NCBI RefSeq assembly: GCF_964204645.1
Contig: NC_134033.1
Coordinates: 2,252,131 to 2,316,130, forward strand
Reading direction: 5' to 3'
Source: Tubulanus polymorphus
Taxonomy: Eukaryota; Animalia; Nemertea
Length of the DNA stretch: 64,000 bases
Under the pieces are notes generated by a model. It did not search any database. It saw only the letters and a list, made by a program, of their open reading frames with translations, and had not been told where the DNA came from. The position numbers and the translations under genes were made by a program. Position 1 is the first letter of the stretch; each line of letters starts with the position of its first letter. Positions 50,690 through 62,304 of this stretch are shown here, one piece after another.

Positions 50690-52185
50690 TGAACGCTCAG
50701 TTTTCGAAAGTGTGCCGATAAAAGTCTCAAGTTTATAGTTCATTTTCAATTAAAAATGTCTCAGGTAAAGTTTTGAACACATGTGAAGTGTGGACGATCA
50801 GTTTTTGAAAGTGTGCTGATAAAATGTCTAATATCTGGTGTTTGTAGTTCATTTTCAATTAAAAATGTCTCAGGTGAAGCACTGAACATATGTGAAGTGT
50901 GGACGATCAGTTTTTGAAAGTGTGCTGATAAAATGTCTAATGTCTGGTGTTTGTAGTTTATTTTCAATTAGAAATGTCTCAGGTGAAGCACTGAACACAT
51001 GTGAAGTGTGGACAATCAGTTTTTGAAAGTGTGCTGATAAAATGTCTAATGTCTGGTGTTTGTAGTTTATTTTCAATTAGAAATGTCTCAGGTGAAGCAC
51101 TGAACACATGTGAAGTGTGGACGATCAGTTTTTGAAAGTGTGCTGATAAAATGTCTAATGTCTGGTGTTTGTAGTTTATTTTCAATTAGAAATGTCTCAG
51201 GTGAAGCACTGAACACATGTGAAGTGTGGACGATCAGTTTTTGAAAGTGTGCTGATAAAATGTCTAATATCTGGTGTTAGTAGTTTATTTTCAATTAGAA
51301 ATGTCTCAGGTGAAGCACTGAACACATGTGAAGTGTGGATGATCAGTTTTTGAGTGTGCTGTTAAAATGTCTAATGTCTGGTGTTTGTAGTTTATTTTCA
51401 ATTAGAAATGTCTCAGGTGAAGCACTGAACGCATGTGAAGTGTGGACGATCAGTTTTTGAAAGTGTGCTGATAAAATGTCTAATGTCTGGTGTTTGTAGT
51501 TCATTTTCAATTAAAAATGTCTCAGGTGAAGCACTGAACACCTGTGAAGTGTGGACGATCAGTTTTTGAAAGTGCGCTGATAAAATGTCTGGTGTTTGTA
51601 GTTCATTTTCAATTAAAAATGTCTCAGGTGAAGCACTGAGCACATGTGAAGTGTGGACGATCAGTTTTTGAAAGTGTGCTGATAAAATGTCTGGTGTTTG
51701 TAGTTCATTTTCAATTAGAAATGTCTCAGGTGAAGCACTGAACACCTGTGAAGTGTGGACGATCAGTTTTTGAAAGTGCGCTGATAAAATGTCTGGTGTT
51801 TGTAGTTCATTTTCAATTAAAAATGTCTCAGGTGAAGCACTGAACACCTGTGAAGTGTGGACGATCAGTTTTTGAAAGTGCGCTGATAAAATGTCTGGTG
51901 TTTGTAGTTTATTTTCAATTAGAAATGTCTCAGGTGAAGCACTGAACACATGTGAAGTGTGGACGATCAGTTTTTGAAAGTGTGCTGATAAAATGTCTAA
52001 TGTCTGGTGTTTGTAGTTTATTTTCAATTAGAAATGTCTCAGGTAAAGTTTTGAACGCATGTAAAGTGTGGACGATCAGCTTTTGAAAGTTTGCTGATAA
52101 AATGTCTAATGTTTGGTATTTGTTGTTCATTTTCAATTAGAAATGTCTCAGGTGAAGCACTGAACACATGTGAATTGTGGACGAT
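50690..52185. repeat. 109-bp satellite, with 101-bp variant units
   Basis: About 14 units, reverse complement of the 10680-11310 array. Confidence 0.95.
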
Positions 52186-52276
52186 CGATGTCAAACTTGA
52201 TGATCAAAAATTGTAACTAGGAGTCAAGAGTTGTAAGAGTCAAGTCAATTTTCGGACTGTTGGTTGATTGACTAAT

Positions 52277-52920
52277 CTACTGGAAACTCTTTTTCAAGAA
52301 TTCCACGCAATGACTGTAACACCTTTCACCCGATTTGATAAACGTGCGCGAAAAAACGTCTCCGTGATAACTGAATTTACCCATATAAAGTTCGACGTCG
52401 ACGCCCGCTTTGCGCAGCCGACCGACGTACAAGATCCCCTCGTCGCGGAGGCAATCGTGTTGGGCGACGGCCACGTACGCAGGCGGCAGTCCGTCGAGAC
52501 GCTTCTGCATCAGCGGCGAAAAATACGGATCGACGACGAAATCGGCGACGTCGTCCGAAAGCGCGCGGTCGCCATCTCGGACGGCGTCGGAGACGAAACC
52601 GTCGCGAATTTCGACGGGTAAATCACGATAATCGACGTAGCGGGAATAGTCGCGTTTCAGGGATTGCGTCGTGTGATTGTTGCGTAGGAAATGCGACGCG
52701 TATTTCGGGTCGATGCCCATATACTGCAGGTGAACGAAGGCGACTCCGCGCGCAGACGAGATGATCGGGTGGTCACGCGTGCGCACGTGCGACGGTAGCT
52801 GGAAATCGAACGCTTGCAGCACCGGGTGTAGGAGAACTTGCAGACGGATTTCGGGAACGTTTGTTTCGTGTCTCATTTTCTGAGCGACGGCGGCGGCTAA
52901 GTTACCCCCGGCGCTATCTC
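52277..52920 (-). CDS. Hydrolase terminal exon C (GDSAGG, HDCLRDE, YHGD)
   Basis: Acceptor TTTCCAG, phase 1, open to stop; Ser-Asp-His triad residues present. Confidence 0.9.
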
Positions 52921-55900
52921 CTGGAAATATAAATGAGATCATAAATGTCGTATCCTAAACGGAGTCCAGTTCAAATGCGCTGCAAATTTGGTATAACCTC
53001 AGCATAACTCTATTCGATGTATCAGTCATCTCTCCCTAGGGAGAAGTTACATCGGGGAAGCAACTAAGCGCTTGGAGTCATCTATCAGGCCGGGTACCCG
53101 TCTACTCCTGGGCGATGAGAGGCAATGAGGATAAGTGTCGTGCCCGAGGACACATTAGTTCATTTTCAATGTTTTAAACACTACAATCTAAATCTTATTT
53201 CGATCTTGAAATAGGGATTGCATCCGATTCATTTTGGTTGAAAGATTTGGTTTAATTCGTTTTGTTTTGGTGTCCCTTACAAACCCACCACCTCTGCCGG
53301 AAACGAAACAGGGGCTTTGATTTTGAAGATAGTTGTGTGATCAAATTTACAGAAACCAGTTATTTAAATCAAAGTAATTGGAAATTTCGGTTCCGGTTCG
53401 TTCGAACGATCTTCCAACCAATCTGAACCGGCAAGCGTAACTGAACCGTAGAACTGGAATAGCGTGCAAATAGCTAAATGAATCTAAGCGCTTTATTTAA
53501 ATCATATTTCTAACAGAATACTGAATCTTGAAATCGAAGTTTCTTAATAAAGGAATCCGACACCGAGCCACAAAAAATTGTCTTCTTACTCTAAATATCG
53601 CGCGATCGATTACTGAAGTGTTTTTCTGAGAAAGTTGATGATATGCTCGATGCCTCGCGCCCCCGGTCGATTCAAATACCACGTCAGTACGTCGTCGTGA
53701 AACCCGACGCGATCGTAATAAACCTCCGTCTGGACGCCGGCTCGACGCAGACGATCGGCGTATAGCAACGCGTCGTCGCGGAGAACGTCGTAACCGGCAG
53801 ACGACACGTACGCAGGCGGCAAGTCGGCGAGTCCGTCCTCATCGGGTAACAACAGCGGACTAAACCTGGCGTCGAGAACGAATCCTTCCGAGTCCGCGTC
53901 GAATTCCGAATCTTCGTTTTCGCTCGCGTTGACGGGATCCGAATCGACGTCTCGCCGGAAGTCAGCCGGTAGATTTCGCGGGTCGACGTATCGCGAGTAT
54001 CGTTCGCGAGACGGTTTCGAAACGTGTCGATTTCGACGGAATTTCTCGGCGACGTTGCGGCCCTTCCCCGCGTACAACGAAGAGTACCGCGCGGCGACCT
54101 CAATCGAAGTGACGATCGCGTATTTATCGTTCTCGAGGTACGACGGTAACTGGAAATCGAACGCTTGCAGCACCGCGTGGATGAGAACTTGCAGACGGAT
54201 TTCGGGAACGTTTTTTTCGTGTCTCATTTTCTGAGCGACCGCGGCGGCTAAGTTACCCCCGGCGCTATCTCCTGGAAATAAAAACAAAATACCCAGATAA
54301 TCGGTACGAGCTAGAATTTGAATGCAAGCAATCTTTTCCTGTCGAAATTCGATTTCTTTTTTTGATGATATTTGAAAAATCCTTCAGACCAGATTCTGTA
54401 GCAAACTGACAAAATGTCCGAGTAATCAGTCAGTGCTACAATCTAAATCCAATTCAGTCCTTTCCTGTCGAAATTCGATTTCTTTTTTGGTGAAATTTGA
54501 AAAATCCTTCAGACCAGATTCTGTAGCAAACTGACAAAATGTCCGAGTAATCAGTCAGTGCTACAATCTAAATCCAATTCAGTCCTTTCCTGTCGAAATT
54601 CGATTTCTTTTTTGGTGAAATTTGAAAAATCCTTCAGACCAGATTCTGTAGCAAACTGACAAAATGTCCGAGTAATCAGTCAGTGCTACAATCTAAATCC
54701 AATTCAGTCTTTTCCTGTCGAAATTCGATTTCTTTTTTGGTGAAATTTGAAAAATCCTTCAGACCAGATTCTGTAGCAAAATGACAAAATGTCCGAGTAA
54801 TCAGTCAGTGCTACAATCTAAATCCAATTCAGTCCTTTCCTGTCGAAATTCGATTTCTTTTTTGGTGAAATTTGAAAAATCCTTCAGACCAGATTCTGTA
54901 GCAAACTGACAAAATGTCCGAGTAATCAGTCAATGTTACAATCTAAATCCAATTCAGTCTTTTCCTGGCGAATTCGATTTGTTTTTTTTTTGTGTTATTC
55001 AAAAATCCAAAGTAATCAATCAGTACATCGAATTCAGTCTATTCCCGTCAAATTCTTTAATGAAAGAATATTTTCGATGAGTACTCTCAATACCGGTCAA
55101 TCCTTTACTTAGAACTCTCGAAACCAGAACAATGTAACCGGGCTAAAAATTTTACAGGTGGAAATGTAAATACAGTGGAACCTCGTTATAACGAACTCGG
55201 ATATAAACGAACGATTCATCGGATACAGCGAATATAGATGTGGTCCCAAGTAAGACCATGTCCATTTGGTTAATTTCATACTGGACATAACAGTGAACTA
55301 TTGGTTATAACGAATATATTTTCTGGTCCCCTGAAGTTCGCTGTAACGAGGTTCCACTGTACAGTTCAAGTCCTTTATAACGCCACTCACTGTTGGAACC
55401 AACCGAAAGTATGGCGTTATGAAGAGAATATATTTTCATTGAATTCGATTAAGATTTTTTCTCTGAAAAATCTTGGCCTTGAAGTGAGTTGTGGCATTAG
55501 AAAGGATGGCAGCCTAATAACAGACTCAGTGAAAAACCCATCAAAGATAATTCCTCGCAGAAGAGAATGAACGAATCGAGCATCTCAAATCGAGCATGAA
55601 AACCACTGAATAAAACTCTACTCATTTCTTTATTCGTTATATAAAACTTTTGATCAAAATTCACACATTTTAATAATATGTACATGATTTGCATATATGT
55701 TAATCAATAACTGGCAGACGGTAATTACCGTTCTAACATCATCGGAATGTAACGATGTGAAATACTGATTTTATGATTATTTTCATGATTCAGCAACAAA
55801 ATCTCGGGATTATTCTCATAATATCTCGGGACAATTCATACATTTACAGAAGACTTCTCTGATTCTCAACTCAGATATCACTCTCAAGTCAAAAGATCCG

Positions 55901-58900
55901 ACTTGATCAGAGTCTACTGTACCATCGAACTCAGATACTGTTTTAAATCAGAAGATCTGCCTTGAGCGGAGTCTACTGTACCATCCAACTCAGATATCAC
56001 TCTCAAGTCAAAAGATCAGACTCTTGAGTGGAGTGTACTGTACCATCCAACTCAGATATCACTCTCAAGTCAAAAGATCCGACTTGATCAGAGTCTACTG
56101 TACCATCGAACTCAGATACTGTTTTAAATCAGAAGATCAGACTTGAGCGGAGTCTACTGTACCATCCAACTCACATATCACTCACAAGTCAAAAGATCCG
56201 ACTTGAGCGGAGTATACTGTACCATCCCACTCGCATGTCACTCACAAGTCAAAAGATCAGACTTGAGCGGAGTTTACTGTACCATCCAACTCACATGTCA
56301 CTCACAAGTCAAAAGATCAGACTTGAGCGGAGTCTACTGTACCATCCAACTCAGATATCACTCACAAGTCAAAAGATCAGACTTGAGCGGAGTCTACTGT
56401 ACTATCCAACTCAGATATCACTCTCAAGTCAAAAGATCTGACTTGATCAGAGTCTACTGTATTATCCAACTCAGATATAACTCTCAAGTCAAAAGATCAG
56501 ACTTGAGCTGAGTCTACTGTACCATCCAACTCAGATATCACTCTCAAGTCAAAAGATCAGACTTGAGCGGAGTCTGCTGTATCATCCAACTCAGATATCA
56601 CTCTCAAGTCAAAAGATTTGACTTCAAAGTCCAAAATGGAGTTACTTTAGCAGCAAATGTCTACTGTATACGAACATTGTATAAAGTCACTCGTAAATTT
56701 CTAAGAATATTTCATTAAGACTTTTCAGTTTTCATCTCAAACATCTGCTTCAAAAATGCGATCAAATCGTTGAATGTTCTCGCGCCGGCCGCAAAATTAC
56801 CGAACCGCAAAACGTCTTGATGAAACCCGCGTTCGTAGTATTTCAAGGTCGTCACGACGCCGTCTTTGCGCAGACGCCGCGCGTATATAACGGCGTCGTC
56901 CGCGACGACGTCGTAGCCCGCGGCGACCACGTACGCCGGCGGCAATCCCTTCAACGTTTTCTGCATCAACGGCGCGAAATACGGATGCAACACGAAATTC
57001 TGCATCGCGTCCGACAGAGTCTCGTCGCCGGCGTCGACGATGCCGACGCGGTCGCGCGCGTAATCGCGTCGATGCGCCGGAGGCAGAATCGCGAAATCGA
57101 CCAGGTACGAGTACGTCGTTTTCAGGTATCGCGACGTGTGGTTGTTGCGCGCGAAGAACCACGCGATCGCCGGGTCCTTGCGCATGTATCCGAGCCAGGC
57201 GCGCGCCACGCCGCGCGTCGACGCGCCGACAGGTCGGCGTTCGTTGCGCGCGTACGACGGCAGACGGAAATCGAACGCTTGCAGCATCGGCGTCAGCAAC
57301 ACTTGTAACCGCAGCGACGGCAGTCCGCGCGGCGTGCGCATGAATTTCTGCGCGACGGCGGCCGCCAGGTTTCCGCCGGCGTCGTCACCTGCAATAAAAG
57401 ACGGCAGACGGATTTCGGATCGGAGGCGTCGAGAAAACGTCGGCAATACCGACGGTCGAAATGCGACAAAAGCATGCGCAGCGTGAAATACTCAAAACAA
57501 TCCTCAACAAATGAAATCAATTTTCTCGTAAAAATATCAAATCCTCCAAGTGAGTTATAAGAGGCAGATAGGAGACGATATCCGGTTTATGGGGAGTCGA
57601 AATTGATTTTCATAAGGAGCTGAGCCAGTTACACAGTCTGATCAAAGTGACATAAGATCTTAAGACTGGTCTTGAATCTTAAGACTGGCTGTATAGTAGA
57701 ACCACCGGTAAGATGACCGTAAGACTGGTGTTAAATTGTTTGATCGGTTATACAACTAAAATCAGCTAAGACTGCTGGTCTTAAGTTGTTAGATTGGCTA
57801 TAGAACCAAAATGAGCTCAGCCTGGTCTTAAATTTTAAGAACAGTCTTAGACTGGCGCCGATGGCTAATCTCGATGGTAAATCTACTAAATCCAAAACGG
57901 ATTAAAGATTTGTCGCGAGCGGCATTTATTTTCAAGCGTAATTACGCGAAGCTACGTTCGAATTCAAAAACTTACCCATAACGACGATTTTCGACGGATC
58001 GATTTTGAACTGCGAGCCGAATTCCAATAGGTGGCGCGTCACGGCGAAACAGTCGTCGAACGGAGCCGGAAACGGGTGTTCAGGAGCCAAACGATAACTG
58101 AAAAGATTAAACGGTGAAAGATATCGTATAACCACAGGCACACGTTGCAGTCATCAGGACCTGCATCAACGAGCCGTCGGTTAGAGATTGGACTCGGTAG
58201 ATTTCAAATAAGTTCATTTCTGACGTTTCTACTGTAGAGTCAAATCTTAATTCTAGAGTAGAACTAAATCCAGCTAATCTAACTCGAATCCAACTAATCT
58301 AACTCGAATCCAACTAATCTAACTCGAATCCAGCTAATCTAACTCGAATCCAACTAATCTAACTCGAATCCAACTAATCTAACTCGAATCCAACTAATCT
58401 AACTCGAATCCAGCTAATCTAACTCGAATCCAGCTAACCTAACTCGAATCCAACTAATCTAACTCGAATCCAGCTAATCTAACTCGAATCCAAGATTTTG
58501 ATCGCCCTCTGATCAGTCAGTTTTATGTAATCGAAATCATCATTTTCAATTTTTCAAATGGATTTTTTTCGAACCCACGAAAAATATCGATGTTATCAAA
58601 CATTCAAGTCTCAAAAAAAGATTCGGTTTCGTTCTCCCAGTTTTTTTGGAATTAGTTAATTTCAACTCCTCTTAATCTAACAAACTTTCAGTGGAACCAT
58701 TTCCTTGCTTTCAGTGTACTATTAGGATTTCTGATGAACCTGATAAACCGTTTGTCCGCGTCTGGAACCGAAATTTATATTCTATGATAAAGATAAATTC
58801 ACTTACTCGACTGATATGACGGTGAATTGAGTACGTCTGGCCAGTTCTCTAGTGAATTCATCGTGAGTATCTGAAAAATATTTATGAAATCAACTTCATT

Positions 58901-61900
58901 TTCGGCGTTATCCGCAACAGGTTTTAGCGGGGCAGCTGCCCCTTTCATTTTTACATCCACCCCTCTGTCAATCAGCCACTCCTTATAAAATATCTGCTGC
59001 CCCTACCAGAGTTGATGTCAATATCCTCTCAATGCTGATGATTGCTTTGAAATGTATTGGCCAGTTTTATATATATCGCAACTGTGTTTCCCGAAACAGG
59101 TTTTAGAGGGGCGGCCATTCATTTTACATCGACCGCGCTCTGAAAATCAGCCAACCCTAATGAAACATCTGTCAATATGTGGATGTCAATATTCTCTCAA
59201 TGCTGATGGAAAATATTGCATTCAATGGGACAAATAGATGGATATTACACCAAAATTAAGCTTTAAAAATCTATACTTTTTGTGGGATCGAAGCCTTGCT
59301 ACTTCAGCAGCCGCGATGTCATACACTTAACAAATGGATGCAGCACGACTTTAAAATTCCAGCATTTGGACTGAACACTGTTTTTTTTATTAACTTTATT
59401 AACTTTCAGCGCGTCTACACCACAGTGCGGTGTATGAATCGGTGATGGATTTTGCTAGTACACCGCACTGCAGTGTATTGGTGTAATGAGTAATTAGTTT
59501 TTATCTCTATTGAAAGATGGCAGCACCTGTCAAACATAGTGAAATATTAGTAACTAACGATACACCGCACCGCGGTGTAGACGCACTTTAGCGGTATTCC
59601 CGTTATTAAACACACAAGGGCTGAATTTTTCAAAATTTTCAAATTATCTCCAGCACTATAGGGTATTGATAAGTCAGCACTGAAAGGGTTAAGAAGGCGA
59701 GGTTTTTGTTTTACGTACCGATACTCATAATGGTCCAGCCTCCGCCGTGGAAGTAAACGATCGCTGGGCCGTACGCGCTGCCTTTCACCGGTTCATAGAT
59801 GCGAACTCTTACGCCTTCGATTTCCGTCGTCTTTATCTGAAATACGAAACGAAAAATGTTCATCGAAACGACAATATCGTCTCTCACATCGGTCGGCAGA
59901 CGTTCAAGGACGATGACTTTTAGAGCCCATTACAAGATATTCAAGGCCTTAAAATTGGCCCATCCCCGTTCGAGGACTCTTCAGGACGTCCACGAACCAC
60001 GATGCAGGGTCCGATCTAAGCGCTCGTCCGATTGCCCGGGACAAGTATATTCTTATCAGGGCAAGTAGGTTTACCATTATCACTTGTCCCCCGGGCTAGC
60101 GCGATTTGATGTCAGAAAACTTTTTTCCCACTCGTTACAACGGATGATAGTGCCATCAATCAAACTGCCGGTGTAGGATAAGTAGTTTTTGGAGGGGGCA
60201 AGCAAAATTTTCAGATATGCTTGCCCCCAGGGCAAGTGGCTTTCGTTCCTTACATCGGACCCTGCGATGGCTCAAGTCTGTTAACTAACAGAAGTTAACA
60301 GCTTATATTTAAGATAAGTCTAAGACCGACTAAGGAAAGATTAATTTGTTTTCAAAACCTAGAATTTTGTACCCGATGTGACGATTCTAGAAATTTCAAC
60401 TGCGTACAACTAACAGATTTTCAGGTCCCCTATGGTTTGTTGTTACGAGGTTCCACAGATTCTGAAGTCACTCGAACCACTTATTTTGTTACGAGCTTCA
60501 GTGACTTAATTTTATAGTCTATCTAACAAATAAAGATTTCAAACTGGTCTATAATAATAGCAAAAATAAATAAAGAGGATATTTCAAGATACTCCTGACT
60601 TGACCGTACAACTGATCCCAGCAGTTTTTACAGATAAACCACAAAGAAAAGTTGAAATTTTTTTAAAGAAAGTTGGTCGTCTGGCAGCAGTTTTTTCTAT
60701 GTCAGAAGGCTTCAACCCGATCACTTATCTTAGCTAAACTTTTTTCTCCAAATCTAAGAAACGCCGATAGGAAAATAACGAAAGTTCTAAAAGGAAAATG
60801 AAACGGTGCTTACGTTTAGGTCGGGGTCGTCGATTTTCATACCGGCCACGTACGCCGTATTCAGTATCCATCTCATCGTCTCGTGCTCGGTCGCTATTCC
60901 TAACTTAGAGCTGGCGAATGCCTGAAAAATATAAAAGAAAGCGTCAATTTCAGTGAGGGTTCTTTCACCACTTGATCATTCCATTATTTTACTATTATTT
61001 TGGTCTTTCTTCGAAATCTTATTTTTTTGGAAAATTCCAGTGAGGGATTTGTGGTCCTGACACCAGGGTTCTTATAGATCAGGGAATCCAAAAATAACTT
61101 GATATTTCCCTGACACTTGACCAAAAATTCCCTGATTAAATTATAAGATATCCTCAGTGAGGGCTGTTTCTTATTAAGAGGTACCTTGTGTCACTCGTCA
61201 CCAGCAAGAACAACAAGACACCAAAAATTCAAATTCCCCGATTAAATCATAAGATATCCTCAGTGAGGGCTGTTTCTTATCAAGAGGTTCCTTGTGTCAC
61301 TCGTCACCAGCAAGAACAACAAGATACCAAAAATTCAAATTCCCTGATTGAATTATAAAATATCCTCAATGAGGGCTCTTTGTTATCGTGAGGTTCATTG
61401 TGTCACTCGTCACCAGCAAAAACAACAAGACACGAAAAATCTAAACTCCCTGATTACATTATAGGATATCCTCAGTGAGGGCTGTTTCTTATCAAGAGGT
61501 TCCTCGTGTCACTCGTCACCAGCAAGAACAACAAGACACCAAAAATTCAAATTCCCCGATTAAATCATAAGATATCCTCAGTGAGGGCTGTTTCTTATCA
61601 AGAGGTTCCTTGTGTCACTCGTCACCAGCAAGAACAACAAGATACCAAAAATTCAAATTCCCTGATTGAATTATAAAATATCCTCAATGAGGGCTCTTTG
61701 TTATCGTGAGGTTCATTGTGTCACTCGTCACCAGCAAAAACAACAAGACACGAAAAATCTAAACTCCCTGATTACATTATAGGATATCCTCAGTGAGGGC
61801 TGTTTCTTATCAAGAGGTTCCTCGTGTCACTCGTCACCAGCAAGAACAACAAGACACCAAAAATTCAAATTTCTTGACTTTTTTGGGAATTTCAAGAAAG

Positions 61901-62304
61901 GAGCTTAGAACACTAAACTGGAATTCCTTTGGTTTCCTAGATCTGTAAAACGATATTGAACGATATTGTTCTACCATCCATCCAGGATCCATTCAGAATA
62001 GTTCTGTCAAGTTCCAAATTTCTTGACTTAGGAACTTTTTGGGACTTTCCAAAAGTTCAAGTTTCTGACATTTTGGATAAATTAAAATAATGAGTAGTTG
62101 CCATACTTAATGGACGGCTGACAAGAGCGAAAATGGATTTCTTAAAAGTACACCTACTATATGGCCGGTAAATTTCAGTCCTGCTAATAGCAATCGGACT
62201 TTCCACGGTTCTTCCAGATCGTCGGGTAAAGGATGGTACATGTAATAAGCGATAATTCCAGTCCATAGCGCCAACAACAACACTGAATGCTTCAAAACCG
62301 ACAT
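52277..62304 (-). CDS. Arylacetamide deacetylase / neutral cholesterol ester hydrolase-like HSL-family alpha/beta hydrolase with three alternative last exons
   Basis: Shared exons 62304-62158 (N-terminal signal anchor, [13 protein letters not shown]), 60921-60814, 59836-59719 (VRIYEP, YFHGGGW), 58870-58807 and 58097-57976 ([10 protein letters not shown], ends phase 1). These join in frame to any of 57388-56715, 54271-53610 or 52920-52277, giving 410, 406 or 400 aa. Confidence 0.9.
53085..53153 (-). mobile_element. CORE-SINE-like fragment
   Basis: Minus strand GTGTCCTCGGGCACGACACTTATCCTCATTGCCTCTC..CCCAGGAGTA..GGGTACC resembles the CORE/MIR consensus as recalled; not database-verified. Confidence 0.45.
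53610..54271 (-). CDS. Hydrolase terminal exon B ([17 protein letters not shown])
   Basis: Acceptor TTTCCAG, phase 1, open to stop; AATAAA on - strand at 53497-53492. Confidence 0.9.
54336..54975. repeat. 125-bp tandem repeat, 5 units
   Basis: TTTCCTG(T/G)CGAA at 54336, 54461, 54586, 54711, 54836 and 54961. Confidence 0.95.
55173..55359. mobile_element. Tc1/mariner-pogo-like MITE
   Basis: TA-CAGTGGAACCTCGTTA ... TAACGAGGTTCCACTG-TA. Confidence 0.8.
55866..56622. repeat. 60-bp satellite, ~12 units
   Basis: Reverse complement of the 9030-9484 array. Confidence 0.95.
56715..57388 (-). CDS. Hydrolase terminal exon A ([17 protein letters not shown])
   Basis: Acceptor TTTTATTGCAG, phase 1, open to stop; nucleophile codon is GAC (Asp). 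Confidence 0.88.
58262..58493. repeat. 20-bp minisatellite
   Basis: AACTCGAATCCA(A/G)CTAATCT repeated about 11 times. Confidence 0.95.
59399..59692. mobile_element. piggyBac-like MITE copy
   Basis: Colinear with 1267-1560, ends GCACTGAAAGGG-TTAA. Confidence 0.75.
60005..60264. mobile_element. MITE with 16-bp TIRs and 5-bp target duplication
   Basis: CGATG-CAGGGTCCGATCTAAG ... CTTACATCGGACCCTG-CGATG. Confidence 0.7.
61125..61875. repeat. ~106-bp tandem repeat, ~7 units
   Basis: ATATCCTCA(G/A)TGAGGGCT...GTGTCACTCGTCACCAGCAA units, with an apparent 3-unit higher-order duplication. Confidence 0.92.

What the first reader, a model, noticed from the sequence alone, without database searches (positions are those of the whole stretch)
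57368..57388. Nucleophile Ser replaced by Asp (GDDAGG) in the proximal cassette
Seen: exon A reads G-D-D-A-G-G-N (GAC), where exons B and C read G-D-S-A-G-G-N (AGC), a two-base difference. The acid (GYDVVADD) and His (GFHQD) positions and the reading frame are retained. Known: Asp is the nucleophile in other alpha/beta hydrolases (epoxide hydrolases, haloalkane dehalogenases), and the HSL fold has also produced a non-catalytic receptor (GID1). Inference: isoform A is either a ligand-binding or decoy pseudo-enzyme or has different chemistry, so splicing could toggle between esterase and non-esterase products.
Basis: partly seen in the sequence, partly recalled or inferred. Interest (0 to 1): 0.8.

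Follow-up and report, generated by a model that had tools for sequence, protein, structure and literature searches.

The report
Esterase isoform with aspartate replacing serine
One of three alternative last exons of a ribbon-worm lipid-esterase gene puts an aspartate where nearly all related enzymes have the catalytic serine, so that isoform is probably not a working serine esterase, but whether it is made and what it does is untested.

Summary
The window is Tubulanus polymorphus (a nemertean). On the minus strand lies an AADAC/NCEH1-like gene of the HSL type (Pfam Abhydrolase_3). It has five constant exons and three tandem, frame-compatible last exons: A 57388-56715, B 54271-53610, C 52920-52277. 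A reads G-D-D-A-G-G-N, with GAC at 57381-57383. B and C read G-D-S-A-G-G-N, with AGC.

RefSeq already lists the A form (XP_074658049.1, isoform X1) and the C form (XP_074658050.1, X2). Of 240 family members fetched, 236 have Ser, 2 Gly, 1 Asn, and only this isoform has Asp.

Exon A is not decaying. Its frame is open, its composition is coding-like, it evolves no faster than B or C, and it gives an equally confident fold model. Only A also loses the Arg of the family's acid motif.

A second, very divergent paralogue 226 kb away also has Asp at this position and has lost the catalytic acid.

Best reading (about 0.5): a maintained isoform that is not a serine esterase, that is, a pseudo-enzyme or strongly altered enzyme. 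This is a new variant of a known kind.

The scan had already noted the three-cassette gene on this window (s1-500190).

The parts
57381..57383 (-). Codon GAC = Asp189 of isoform X1, at the nucleophile position (Ser in the family)
   Evidence: In the AlphaFold model it sits between strand 178-188 and helix 190-203, the nucleophile elbow.
56715..57388 (-). Last exon A (proximal cassette, phase 1, stop codon included). It encodes residues 187-410 of XP_074658049.1.
   Evidence: Acceptor is a pyrimidine tract plus AG. Pfam Abhydrolase_3, E 2e-22. 100% match to P0001. GC 61%, GC3 78% against 37-41% in the flanks.
56910..56912 (-). Asp346, the catalytic-acid position, kept in A
   Evidence: This column is invariant in 68 outgroup proteins.
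56901..56903 (-). Ala349 where the family has Arg (the D-x-L-R-D-D/E-G acid motif). This change is unique to A.
   Evidence: Arg in 66 of 68 outgroups, and in B, C and all other paralogues; motif named in PMC8105184.
56820..56822 (-). His376, the catalytic His position, kept in A
   Evidence: Invariant column.
53610..54271 (-). Last exon B (G-D-S-A-G-G-N, Ser codon AGC). The frame is open, but no database isoform uses it.
52277..52920 (-). Last exon C (G-D-S-A-G-G-N, Ser codon AGC), used by XP_074658050.1 (isoform X2)
57976..58097 (-). Constant exon 5. It ends in ...I-V-V-M plus the first base of the split Gly codon, and its donor is GTAAGT.
58807..58870 (-). Constant exon 4
59719..59836 (-). 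Constant exon 3, with the oxyanion-hole motif H-G-G-G (59749-59738) shared by all isoforms
60814..60921 (-). Constant exon 2
62158..62304 (-). Constant exon 1: start codon and the N-terminal hydrophobic helix (membrane anchor, residues 2-22 in the model)

Best explanation
Exon A is a genuine alternative last exon of a membrane-anchored AADAC/NCEH1-like hydrolase gene, and it has been kept by selection. Joined to the constant half (anchor plus HGGG oxyanion hole), it gives a protein with the complete HSL-type fold and pocket but with Asp in place of the nucleophile Ser. This isoform (RefSeq X1) is therefore not a serine esterase. Most likely it is dead or strongly impaired for ester hydrolysis and acts by binding, for example of a lipid or xenobiotic ligand or a partner in the ER membrane. 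The Ser-bearing exon C, and perhaps B, give active esterases from the same promoter. Shown: the sequence, the exon structure, the annotation, the rarity of the change and the lack of decay. Inferred: that the isoform is made, that it lacks esterase activity, and that it has a binding or regulatory role.
For: 1. Asp is at the nucleophile elbow, and the acid, His and HGGG are kept.
2. RefSeq lists the A and C forms as isoforms X1 and X2 of one gene, and my exon coordinates reproduce both proteins exactly.
3. All three cassettes share phase 1 and have good acceptors.
4. A is not decaying. Its 224-codon frame is open. In a substitution-only neutral simulation the frame stays open with P = 0.02 at 0.2 substitutions per site and 0.001 at 0.5, while dS to B and C is above 1.
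5. In the first 15 codons A differs from B and C at 8 synonymous sites but at only one residue.
6. The relative-rate test shows no acceleration: 16 vs 27 and 18 vs 24 unique changes. Tree branch lengths are A 0.79, B 0.95, C 0.83.
7. A deviates at 8 of 46 conserved columns, against 5 for B and 7 for C.
8. AF2 pLDDT is 93.8 for X1 and 95.5 for X2, with the same secondary structure.
9. Mutation of the homologous Ser191 inactivates NCEH1 (PMC9229287).
10. Only A also loses the family Arg next to the acid. The other Asp-bearing relative in this genome (L007) has lost the acid itself. Both fit relaxed constraint on catalysis with the fold kept.
11. AGC to GAC needs two changes through Asn or Gly, both non-nucleophiles, and both occur as rare natural variants in relatives.
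Against: - There is no RNA evidence here.
- No orthologue from another species is sampled; the nearest non-self hit is 44% identical. So conservation of the Asp cannot be tested, and the date of the change is unknown.
- A single recent tandem mutation (AG to GA) would leave all the signs of constraint intact.
- The nearest canonical poly(A) signal lies 1.04 kb after A's stop, beyond a tandem array.
- dN/dS estimates are saturated and are not branch-specific.
- No activity data exist for any Ser-to-Asp member of this family.
Confidence: 0.5

Rival explanations
1. Exon A was disabled recently and is now drifting. The Ser-to-Asp change, possibly a single tandem two-base mutation, killed the esterase. 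The exon may still be spliced in, but its product has no function, and decay is not yet visible.
For: The date of the change cannot be fixed, and no orthologue is available. Two more conserved active-site-adjacent positions are altered only in A: L348V and R349A. A's nearest poly(A) signal is far from its stop. Nucleophile-less members turn up sporadically in other animals.
Against: A carries no more deviations at conserved columns than B or C and shows no rate acceleration. The frame, the acceptor and the coding composition are intact. RefSeq models it as an isoform. Three changes near the catalytic site with none elsewhere look like altered constraint, not general loss of constraint.
Confidence: 0.25
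2. Isoform X1 is an active enzyme that uses Asp189. The Asp could be a nucleophile in an Asp-His-Asp triad, with alkyl-enzyme chemistry as in epoxide hydrolases and haloalkane dehalogenases. Or it could be a general base for water. Splicing would then switch the chemistry of one gene.
For: The acid Asp346, His376 and the HGGG oxyanion hole are all kept alongside the Asp. Asp nucleophiles with a His-Asp dyad are established in other alpha/beta hydrolases (PMC3962183). The end state is Asp rather than the one-step Asn or Gly, and this is seen twice in this genome.
Against: No other feature of the Asp-nucleophile families is present. The oxyanion motif is HGGG, not H-G-X-P. Ala, not Trp, follows the Asp. 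Pfam Abhydrolase_1 scores below its threshold (20.2 vs 25.8 bits). [quoted passage not shown] The conserved Arg of the acid motif is lost in A, and the second Asp-bearing paralogue has lost the acid. No natural Asp-nucleophile member of this family was found among 240 sequences or in the paper searches.
Confidence: 0.15
3. The GAC codon is an assembly error or a rare allele of the sequenced animal, and the normal exon A encodes Ser.
For: The codon could not be checked in reads, and only one assembly is available.
Against: An error would have to be two adjacent substitutions in an otherwise clean, open exon. A is only 45-50% identical to B and C, so a mix-up between the copies is not possible. 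A second paralogue has Asp at the same place. RefSeq's protein carries the same residue, though it comes from the same assembly.
Confidence: 0.05

Closest known systems
Vertebrate NCEH1 (KIAA1363/AADACL1) and AADAC: ER type II membrane serine hydrolases of the GDXG/HSL family
   Same: Same Pfam family (Abhydrolase_3, E 9e-60). Same length. Same N-terminal hydrophobic anchor. HGGG at 115-118 against 113-116. Triad positions 189/346/376 against Ser191/Asp348/His378. 31-36% identity.
   Different: Isoform X1 has Asp, not Ser, in G-D-S-A-G and Ala for the Arg after the acid. The gene has three alternative copies of the exon that carries the nucleophile, cap, acid and His. I know of no such arrangement for the vertebrate genes (from memory, not tested).
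Bacterial and archaeal family IV (HSL-like) esterases with solved structures, e.g. Est2 of Alicyclobacillus (1evq/1qz3), AFEST (1jji), EstD11
   Same: Best matches by sequence (E 2e-41) and by fold (Foldseek E 1e-24 to 1e-20, TM by target 0.73-0.85). They share the three motifs HGGG, GXSXG and D-P-L-R-D-E-G (PMC8105184).
   Different: They are soluble, lack the anchor and the animal-type cap insertions, and all have Ser. Ser-to-Ala versions are deposited as inactive mutants (e.g. 7at2, titled 'inactive EstD11 S144A').
Epoxide hydrolases and haloalkane dehalogenases (Asp-nucleophile alpha/beta hydrolases)
   Same: Asp at the nucleophile elbow together with a His-Asp dyad (PMC3962183).
   Different: They belong to a different subfamily (Abhydrolase_1; sub-threshold match here). 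They have H-G-X-P rather than HGGG, Trp after the nucleophile, and cap Tyr or halide-binding residues. The last three points are from established knowledge. None of these features was seen in cassette A.
Nucleophile-less members of the same animal family, e.g. P0053 of Amphiura filiformis (G-D-N-A-G-G), P0068 (G-E-G-A-G-G), P0029 (G-L-G-A-G-G)
   Same: Same family, Ser lost, rest of the protein intact. P0053 keeps HGGG, and motif scans find D-V-L-R-D-D-G and a candidate His in it.
   Different: Those carry the one-step replacements Asn or Gly and, as far as listed, are separate genes. Here the replacement is the two-step Asp, and it sits in one of three alternative exons of a gene that also encodes Ser forms.
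GID1 gibberellin receptor (non-catalytic HSL-family protein of plants)
   Same: Precedent for the HSL fold being used as a ligand-binding, non-catalytic protein (established knowledge, not tested here).
   Different: GID1 keeps the Ser and has lost the His. It is soluble with an N-terminal lid, and there is no specific similarity to this gene.

Membership tests
AADAC/NCEH1-type HSL-family (GDXG, Pfam Abhydrolase_3) serine hydrolases | Sequence match to Abhydrolase_3 above the curated cut-off | tested here: met
   P0001 scores 202 bits against a cut-off of 25. Exon A alone scores 80 bits.
AADAC/NCEH1-type HSL-family (GDXG, Pfam Abhydrolase_3) serine hydrolases | H-G-G-G oxyanion-hole motif | tested here: met
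   H115-G118 in constant exon 3, shared by all isoforms.
AADAC/NCEH1-type HSL-family (GDXG, Pfam Abhydrolase_3) serine hydrolases | Active serine in G-D-S-A-G (GXSXG) at the nucleophile elbow | tested here: not met
   Isoform X1 (exon A) has G-D-D-A-G. Exons B and C meet the feature. X1 is therefore a homologue by descent, but not a serine hydrolase by this criterion.
AADAC/NCEH1-type HSL-family (GDXG, Pfam Abhydrolase_3) serine hydrolases | Catalytic acid in the D-x-L-R-D-D/E-G motif, and catalytic His | tested here: met
   Asp346 and His376 are present, but the motif is degraded in A to D-V-V-A-D-D-A.
AADAC/NCEH1-type HSL-family (GDXG, Pfam Abhydrolase_3) serine hydrolases | N-terminal transmembrane anchor (type II topology) | tested here: inconclusive
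   There is a hydrophobic N-terminus, modelled as helix 2-22. No dedicated topology predictor was available.
AADAC/NCEH1-type HSL-family (GDXG, Pfam Abhydrolase_3) serine hydrolases | Family IV alpha/beta-hydrolase fold | tested here: met
   AF2 pLDDT 93.8, pTM 0.93. The top 50 Foldseek PDB hits listed are all HSL-like (family IV) esterases or lipases.
Asp-nucleophile alpha/beta hydrolases (epoxide hydrolase / haloalkane dehalogenase type) | Asp at the nucleophile elbow with a His-acid dyad | tested here: met
   Asp189, His376 and Asp346 are at the canonical positions. The geometry was not measurable because no coordinates are returned.
Asp-nucleophile alpha/beta hydrolases (epoxide hydrolase / haloalkane dehalogenase type) | Membership of the Abhydrolase_1-type subfamily, with H-G-X-P and the D-W elbow | tested here: not met
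   Abhydrolase_1 scores 20.2 bits, below its cut-off of 25.8. The motifs here are HGGG and D-A.
Asp-nucleophile alpha/beta hydrolases (epoxide hydrolase / haloalkane dehalogenase type) | Activity on epoxides or haloalkanes through a covalent alkyl-enzyme | not testable with these tools
   This needs enzyme assays and mass spectrometry.
Alternative (mutually exclusive) last exons of one gene | Homologous tandem exons with the same phase and usable splice acceptors, each ending in a stop | tested here: met
Alternative (mutually exclusive) last exons of one gene | Transcripts that join exon 5 to each cassette | not tested
The only indirect support is the RefSeq models X1 (A) and X2 (C). There is none for B.

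The most novel reading that the evidence does not exclude
Alternative splicing switches the nucleophile of one HSL-fold hydrolase from Ser to Asp. The Asp form would be a working Asp-His-Asp enzyme with a different chemistry (a covalent alkyl-enzyme, or water activation). That would be the first natural Asp-nucleophile member of family IV, and a case of one gene encoding two catalytic mechanisms.
Probability: 0.07. Interest if true: 0.85.

Novelty: new variant of a known kind. Interest (0 to 1): 0.4.

Why it matters
If the Asp isoform is made and maintained, one gene would produce, from one promoter and one membrane anchor, both active esterases and a look-alike without the catalytic serine. 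That would be a built-in competitor, ligand holder or regulator. Pseudo-enzymes of the alpha/beta-hydrolase fold are known as separate genes; a switch made by choosing a last exon would be a compact way of making one. It is directly testable by expressing X1 and X2. The rarity of the change (1 Asp among 240 relatives fetched) and its second occurrence in the same genome also make it a natural test of what an Asp does at a serine-hydrolase elbow. If it proves to be a recently dead exon, it is only a snapshot of exon loss and is of little wider interest.

Tried and rejected
1. Reads. 

2. Transcript-derived fragments in the protein collection. I searched with the exon-A frame and with residues 140-270 of the database protein P0001, which span the exon 5/A junction. 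Neither returned a T. polymorphus fragment.

3. The look-up of encoding contigs for P0001 found nothing on record.

4. Orthologues of cassette A. The best non-self hits are 41-44% identical, and none carries Asp.

5. Relatives of the second Asp-bearing paralogue L007. I found one weak hit and no database protein for the gene itself.

6. Whether A and L007 share the Asp by descent is unresolved. The AU test does not reject an A+L007 clade (p = 0.49 with all columns, p = 0.22 without the motif columns), but L007 is a very long branch.

7. dN/dS. dS is above 1 and saturated, the YN00 method failed for most pairs, and the NG86 ratios of 0.42-0.48 are the same for all pairs. They say nothing specific about A's branch.

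8. Literature. The motif string finds no relevant paper, and there were no hits for a catalytic serine replaced by aspartate in esterases.

9. I did not use the large representative-protein search. The word search already covered close relatives, and only the best 150 hits would have been listed.

10. The idea that exon A is compositionally foreign was rejected. All three cassettes are GC- and CpG-rich compared with the flanks.
Full report
**What is there.** The window is G000:C9:2252131-2316130 of Tubulanus polymorphus, a palaeonemertean ribbon worm. An AADAC/NCEH1-like gene lies on the minus strand.
- The five constant exons are 62304-62158, 60921-60814, 59836-59719, 58870-58807 and 58097-57976.
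- They encode an N-terminal hydrophobic helix, the H-G-G-G-W oxyanion motif, and the strand that leads to the nucleophile elbow.
- Exon 5 ends with the first base of a Gly codon and a GTAAGT donor.
- Three homologous last exons follow, all in phase 1 and each behind a pyrimidine tract plus AG: A 57388-56715, B 54271-53610 and C 52920-52277.
- Each matches Pfam Abhydrolase_3 (E 2e-22, 8e-22 and 4e-25).
- Each encodes the nucleophile motif, the cap region, the catalytic acid and the His.
- The cassettes are 45-50% identical to one another.

**The observation.**
- A reads G-D-D-A-G-G-N, with GAC at 57381-57383. B and C read G-D-S-A-G-G-N, with AGC.
- The degenerate DNA pattern for this heptapeptide has three matches in the window against none in 100 shuffles.
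- Asp346 (Y-D-V-V-A-D-D) and His376 (G-F-H-Q-D) are kept.

**Annotation.** The protein collection holds two RefSeq models of this gene.
- P0001 is XP_074658049.1, 'neutral cholesterol ester hydrolase 1-like isoform X1', 410 aa, and uses exon A.
- P0002 is XP_074658050.1, 'arylacetamide deacetylase-like isoform X2', 400 aa, and uses exon C.
- The exon coordinates above reproduce both proteins exactly.
- Exon B gives an open 406-aa frame, but no database protein uses it.
- On method: I sent no joined model of my own to any search tool. Exons were searched by window reference, and the full-length queries were the database proteins P0001 and P0002. Exons were concatenated only inside scripts, to check coordinates against those two proteins.
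- The gene and its A isoform are therefore already annotated. I found no description of the Asp in the papers searched.

**How unusual is the Asp?**
- Among the 240 family members fetched (animal and bacterial), the nucleophile position is Ser in 236, Gly in 2, Asn in 1 (Amphiura filiformis P0053, G-D-N-A-G-G) and Asp only in P0001.
- The best non-self relatives of cassette A are 41-44% identical. No orthologue from another species is sampled.
- The test 'is the Asp conserved in relatives' therefore cannot be run across species.

**A second Asp in the same genome.**
- The genome holds four other AADAC-like last exons.
- One of them, L007 at C9:2025980-2026654 and 226 kb from the window, reads G-D-D-V-G-A-N (Asp codon GAT).
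- It keeps the His but has Ser at the acid position (Y-S-I-T-R-D-D).
- Upstream it has an exon-1-like hydrophobic segment and an HGGGW exon.
- It matches Abhydrolase_3 (E 7e-18), but no database protein corresponds to it.
- It is very divergent: branch length 2.4, and it deviates at 15 of 46 conserved columns.
- With the motif columns removed it attaches next to the A/B/C clade, and A is its nearest row.
- An A+L007 clade is not rejected (p-AU 0.49 and 0.22), so shared descent and independent change both remain open.

**Is exon A decaying?** The evidence says no.
- In a tree of last-exon regions with 68 outgroups, A, B and C form a clade (SH-aLRT 95) with A sister to B+C. The path lengths from the cassettes' common node are 0.79 (A), 0.95 (B) and 0.83 (C).
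- A Tajima-type test with paralogue L004 as outgroup gives 16 vs 27 (A vs B) and 18 vs 24 (A vs C) unique changes, so A is not accelerated.
- Of 46 columns at least 85% conserved in the outgroups, A deviates at 8, B at 5 and C at 7.
- All three cassettes are GC-rich (56-61%) and have high GC3 and CpG against flanks of 36-41% GC.
- In the first 15 codons A differs from B and C at eight synonymous sites and at one residue, the Ser/Asp.
- Synonymous divergence is saturated (dS above 1).
- In a substitution-only neutral simulation, A's frame stays open with probability 0.02 at 0.2 substitutions per site and 0.001 at 0.5.
- AlphaFold models built on the same 70-sequence alignment are equally confident for X1 (pLDDT 93.8, pTM 0.93) and X2 (95.5, 0.94), with the same secondary structure. 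Residue 189 lies between strand 178-188 and the following helix.
- The best structural matches are family IV/HSL-like esterases. Est2 is the best match by sequence.

**What is specific to A.** Three changes are specific to A: the Ser-to-Asp change, Leu-to-Val at 348 and Arg-to-Ala at 349. The last two lie in the family's acid motif D-x-L-R-D-D/E-G. Arg is present there in 66 of 68 outgroups, in B and C, and in every other paralogue (motif named in PMC8105184). The distinctive changes of A thus cluster at the catalytic apparatus, while the fold-defining positions are kept. AGC to GAC needs two changes through AAC (Asn) or GGC (Gly). Both intermediates lack a nucleophile, and both exist as rare natural variants in relatives. 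A single tandem mutation cannot be excluded.

**Mechanism.**
- In NCEH1 the triad is Ser191/Asp348/His378 with the oxyanion hole at 113-116, and mutating Ser191 abolishes activity (PMC9229287). The T. polymorphus positions are 189/346/376 and 115-118.
- Without the Ser, X1 cannot work as a serine esterase.
- Asp nucleophiles operate in epoxide hydrolases and haloalkane dehalogenases (PMC3962183).
- X1 has none of their other marks. It has HGGG rather than H-G-X-P, Ala rather than Trp after the Asp, and a sub-threshold Abhydrolase_1 score.
- Converting an esterase to an epoxide hydrolase in the laboratory required a loop exchange and gave low activity.
- The loss of the motif Arg in A, and of the acid itself in L007, points to relaxed constraint on catalysis.
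- My best reading (0.5) is a maintained, membrane-anchored, non-serine isoform that acts by binding rather than by ester hydrolysis, made from the same gene as Ser-bearing esterase forms.
- The rivals are a recently disabled exon still intact (0.25), genuine Asp-based catalysis (0.15), and an assembly error or rare allele (0.05).

**What remains open.** Four things are untested: expression of A (and of B), the codon in reads, conservation in other nemerteans, and any activity. A's nearest canonical poly(A) signal is 1.04 kb after its stop, beyond a 60-bp tandem array. B and C have signals at 113 and 255 nt.

**Earlier notes of this scan.** The scan records the three-cassette gene on this window (s1-500190), which I confirmed. 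It also records a nucleoside hydrolase elsewhere in this genome with duplicated last exons (s1-487588), which I did not test.

**Verdict.** It is a new variant of a known kind (an AADAC/NCEH1-like isoform with Asp for the catalytic Ser) in an already annotated gene. It is of moderate interest until expression and conservation are shown.

Noticed in passing
L007 / L013 = G000:C9 about 2,023,800-2,026,700 (+), 226 kb before the window: A second AADAC-like gene has Asp at the nucleophile position (G-D-D-V-G-A-N). It has Ser at the catalytic-acid position, keeps the His and HGGGW, and has an exon-1-like hydrophobic segment. It is very divergent, and no protein in the collection corresponds to it. 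Its relation to cassette A is unresolved.
   Followed up: partly
window 53610-54271 (-): Cassette B is intact (open frame, Ser, acid, His, good acceptor, AATAAA 113 nt after the stop), but no database isoform uses it.
   Followed up: partly
window 54272-54228 and 52921-52877 (-): The first 45 bases (the Gly-to-Lys codons) of cassettes B and C differ at one base, while the exons as wholes are only about 48% identical at protein level. This suggests gene conversion, or very strong constraint, at the 5' end.
   Followed up: no
window 55867-56624, 54335-54987, 50731-52186: Tandem arrays flank the cassettes. A 60-bp unit x12.6 starts 91 nt after A's stop. A 125-bp unit x5.2 ends 64 nt before B's acceptor. 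A 109-bp unit x13.6 starts 91 nt after C's stop, and C's nearest AATAAA signals (255 and 364 nt after its stop) fall inside it.
   Followed up: no
window 61125-61871 and 58267-58493: There are further tandem arrays inside introns 1 and 4 of the gene: a 106/318-bp unit and a 20-bp unit x11.4.
   Followed up: no
P0053 (Amphiura filiformis), P0068, P0029: Other animal members of the family have lost the Ser: G-D-N-A-G-G, G-E-G-A-G-G and G-L-G-A-G-G. P0053 keeps HGGG, and motif scans find the D-V-L-R-D-D-G motif and a candidate His in it. Nucleophile-less AADAC-like proteins therefore recur at a low rate (4 of 240).
   Followed up: partly
G000:C2:27477822-27478469 (L004), C3:6254710-6255276 (L005), C3:27302800-27303417 (L006): Three further AADAC-like genes of T. 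polymorphus each have a single Ser-bearing last exon. L004 is the nearest relative of the A/B/C clade.
   Followed up: partly
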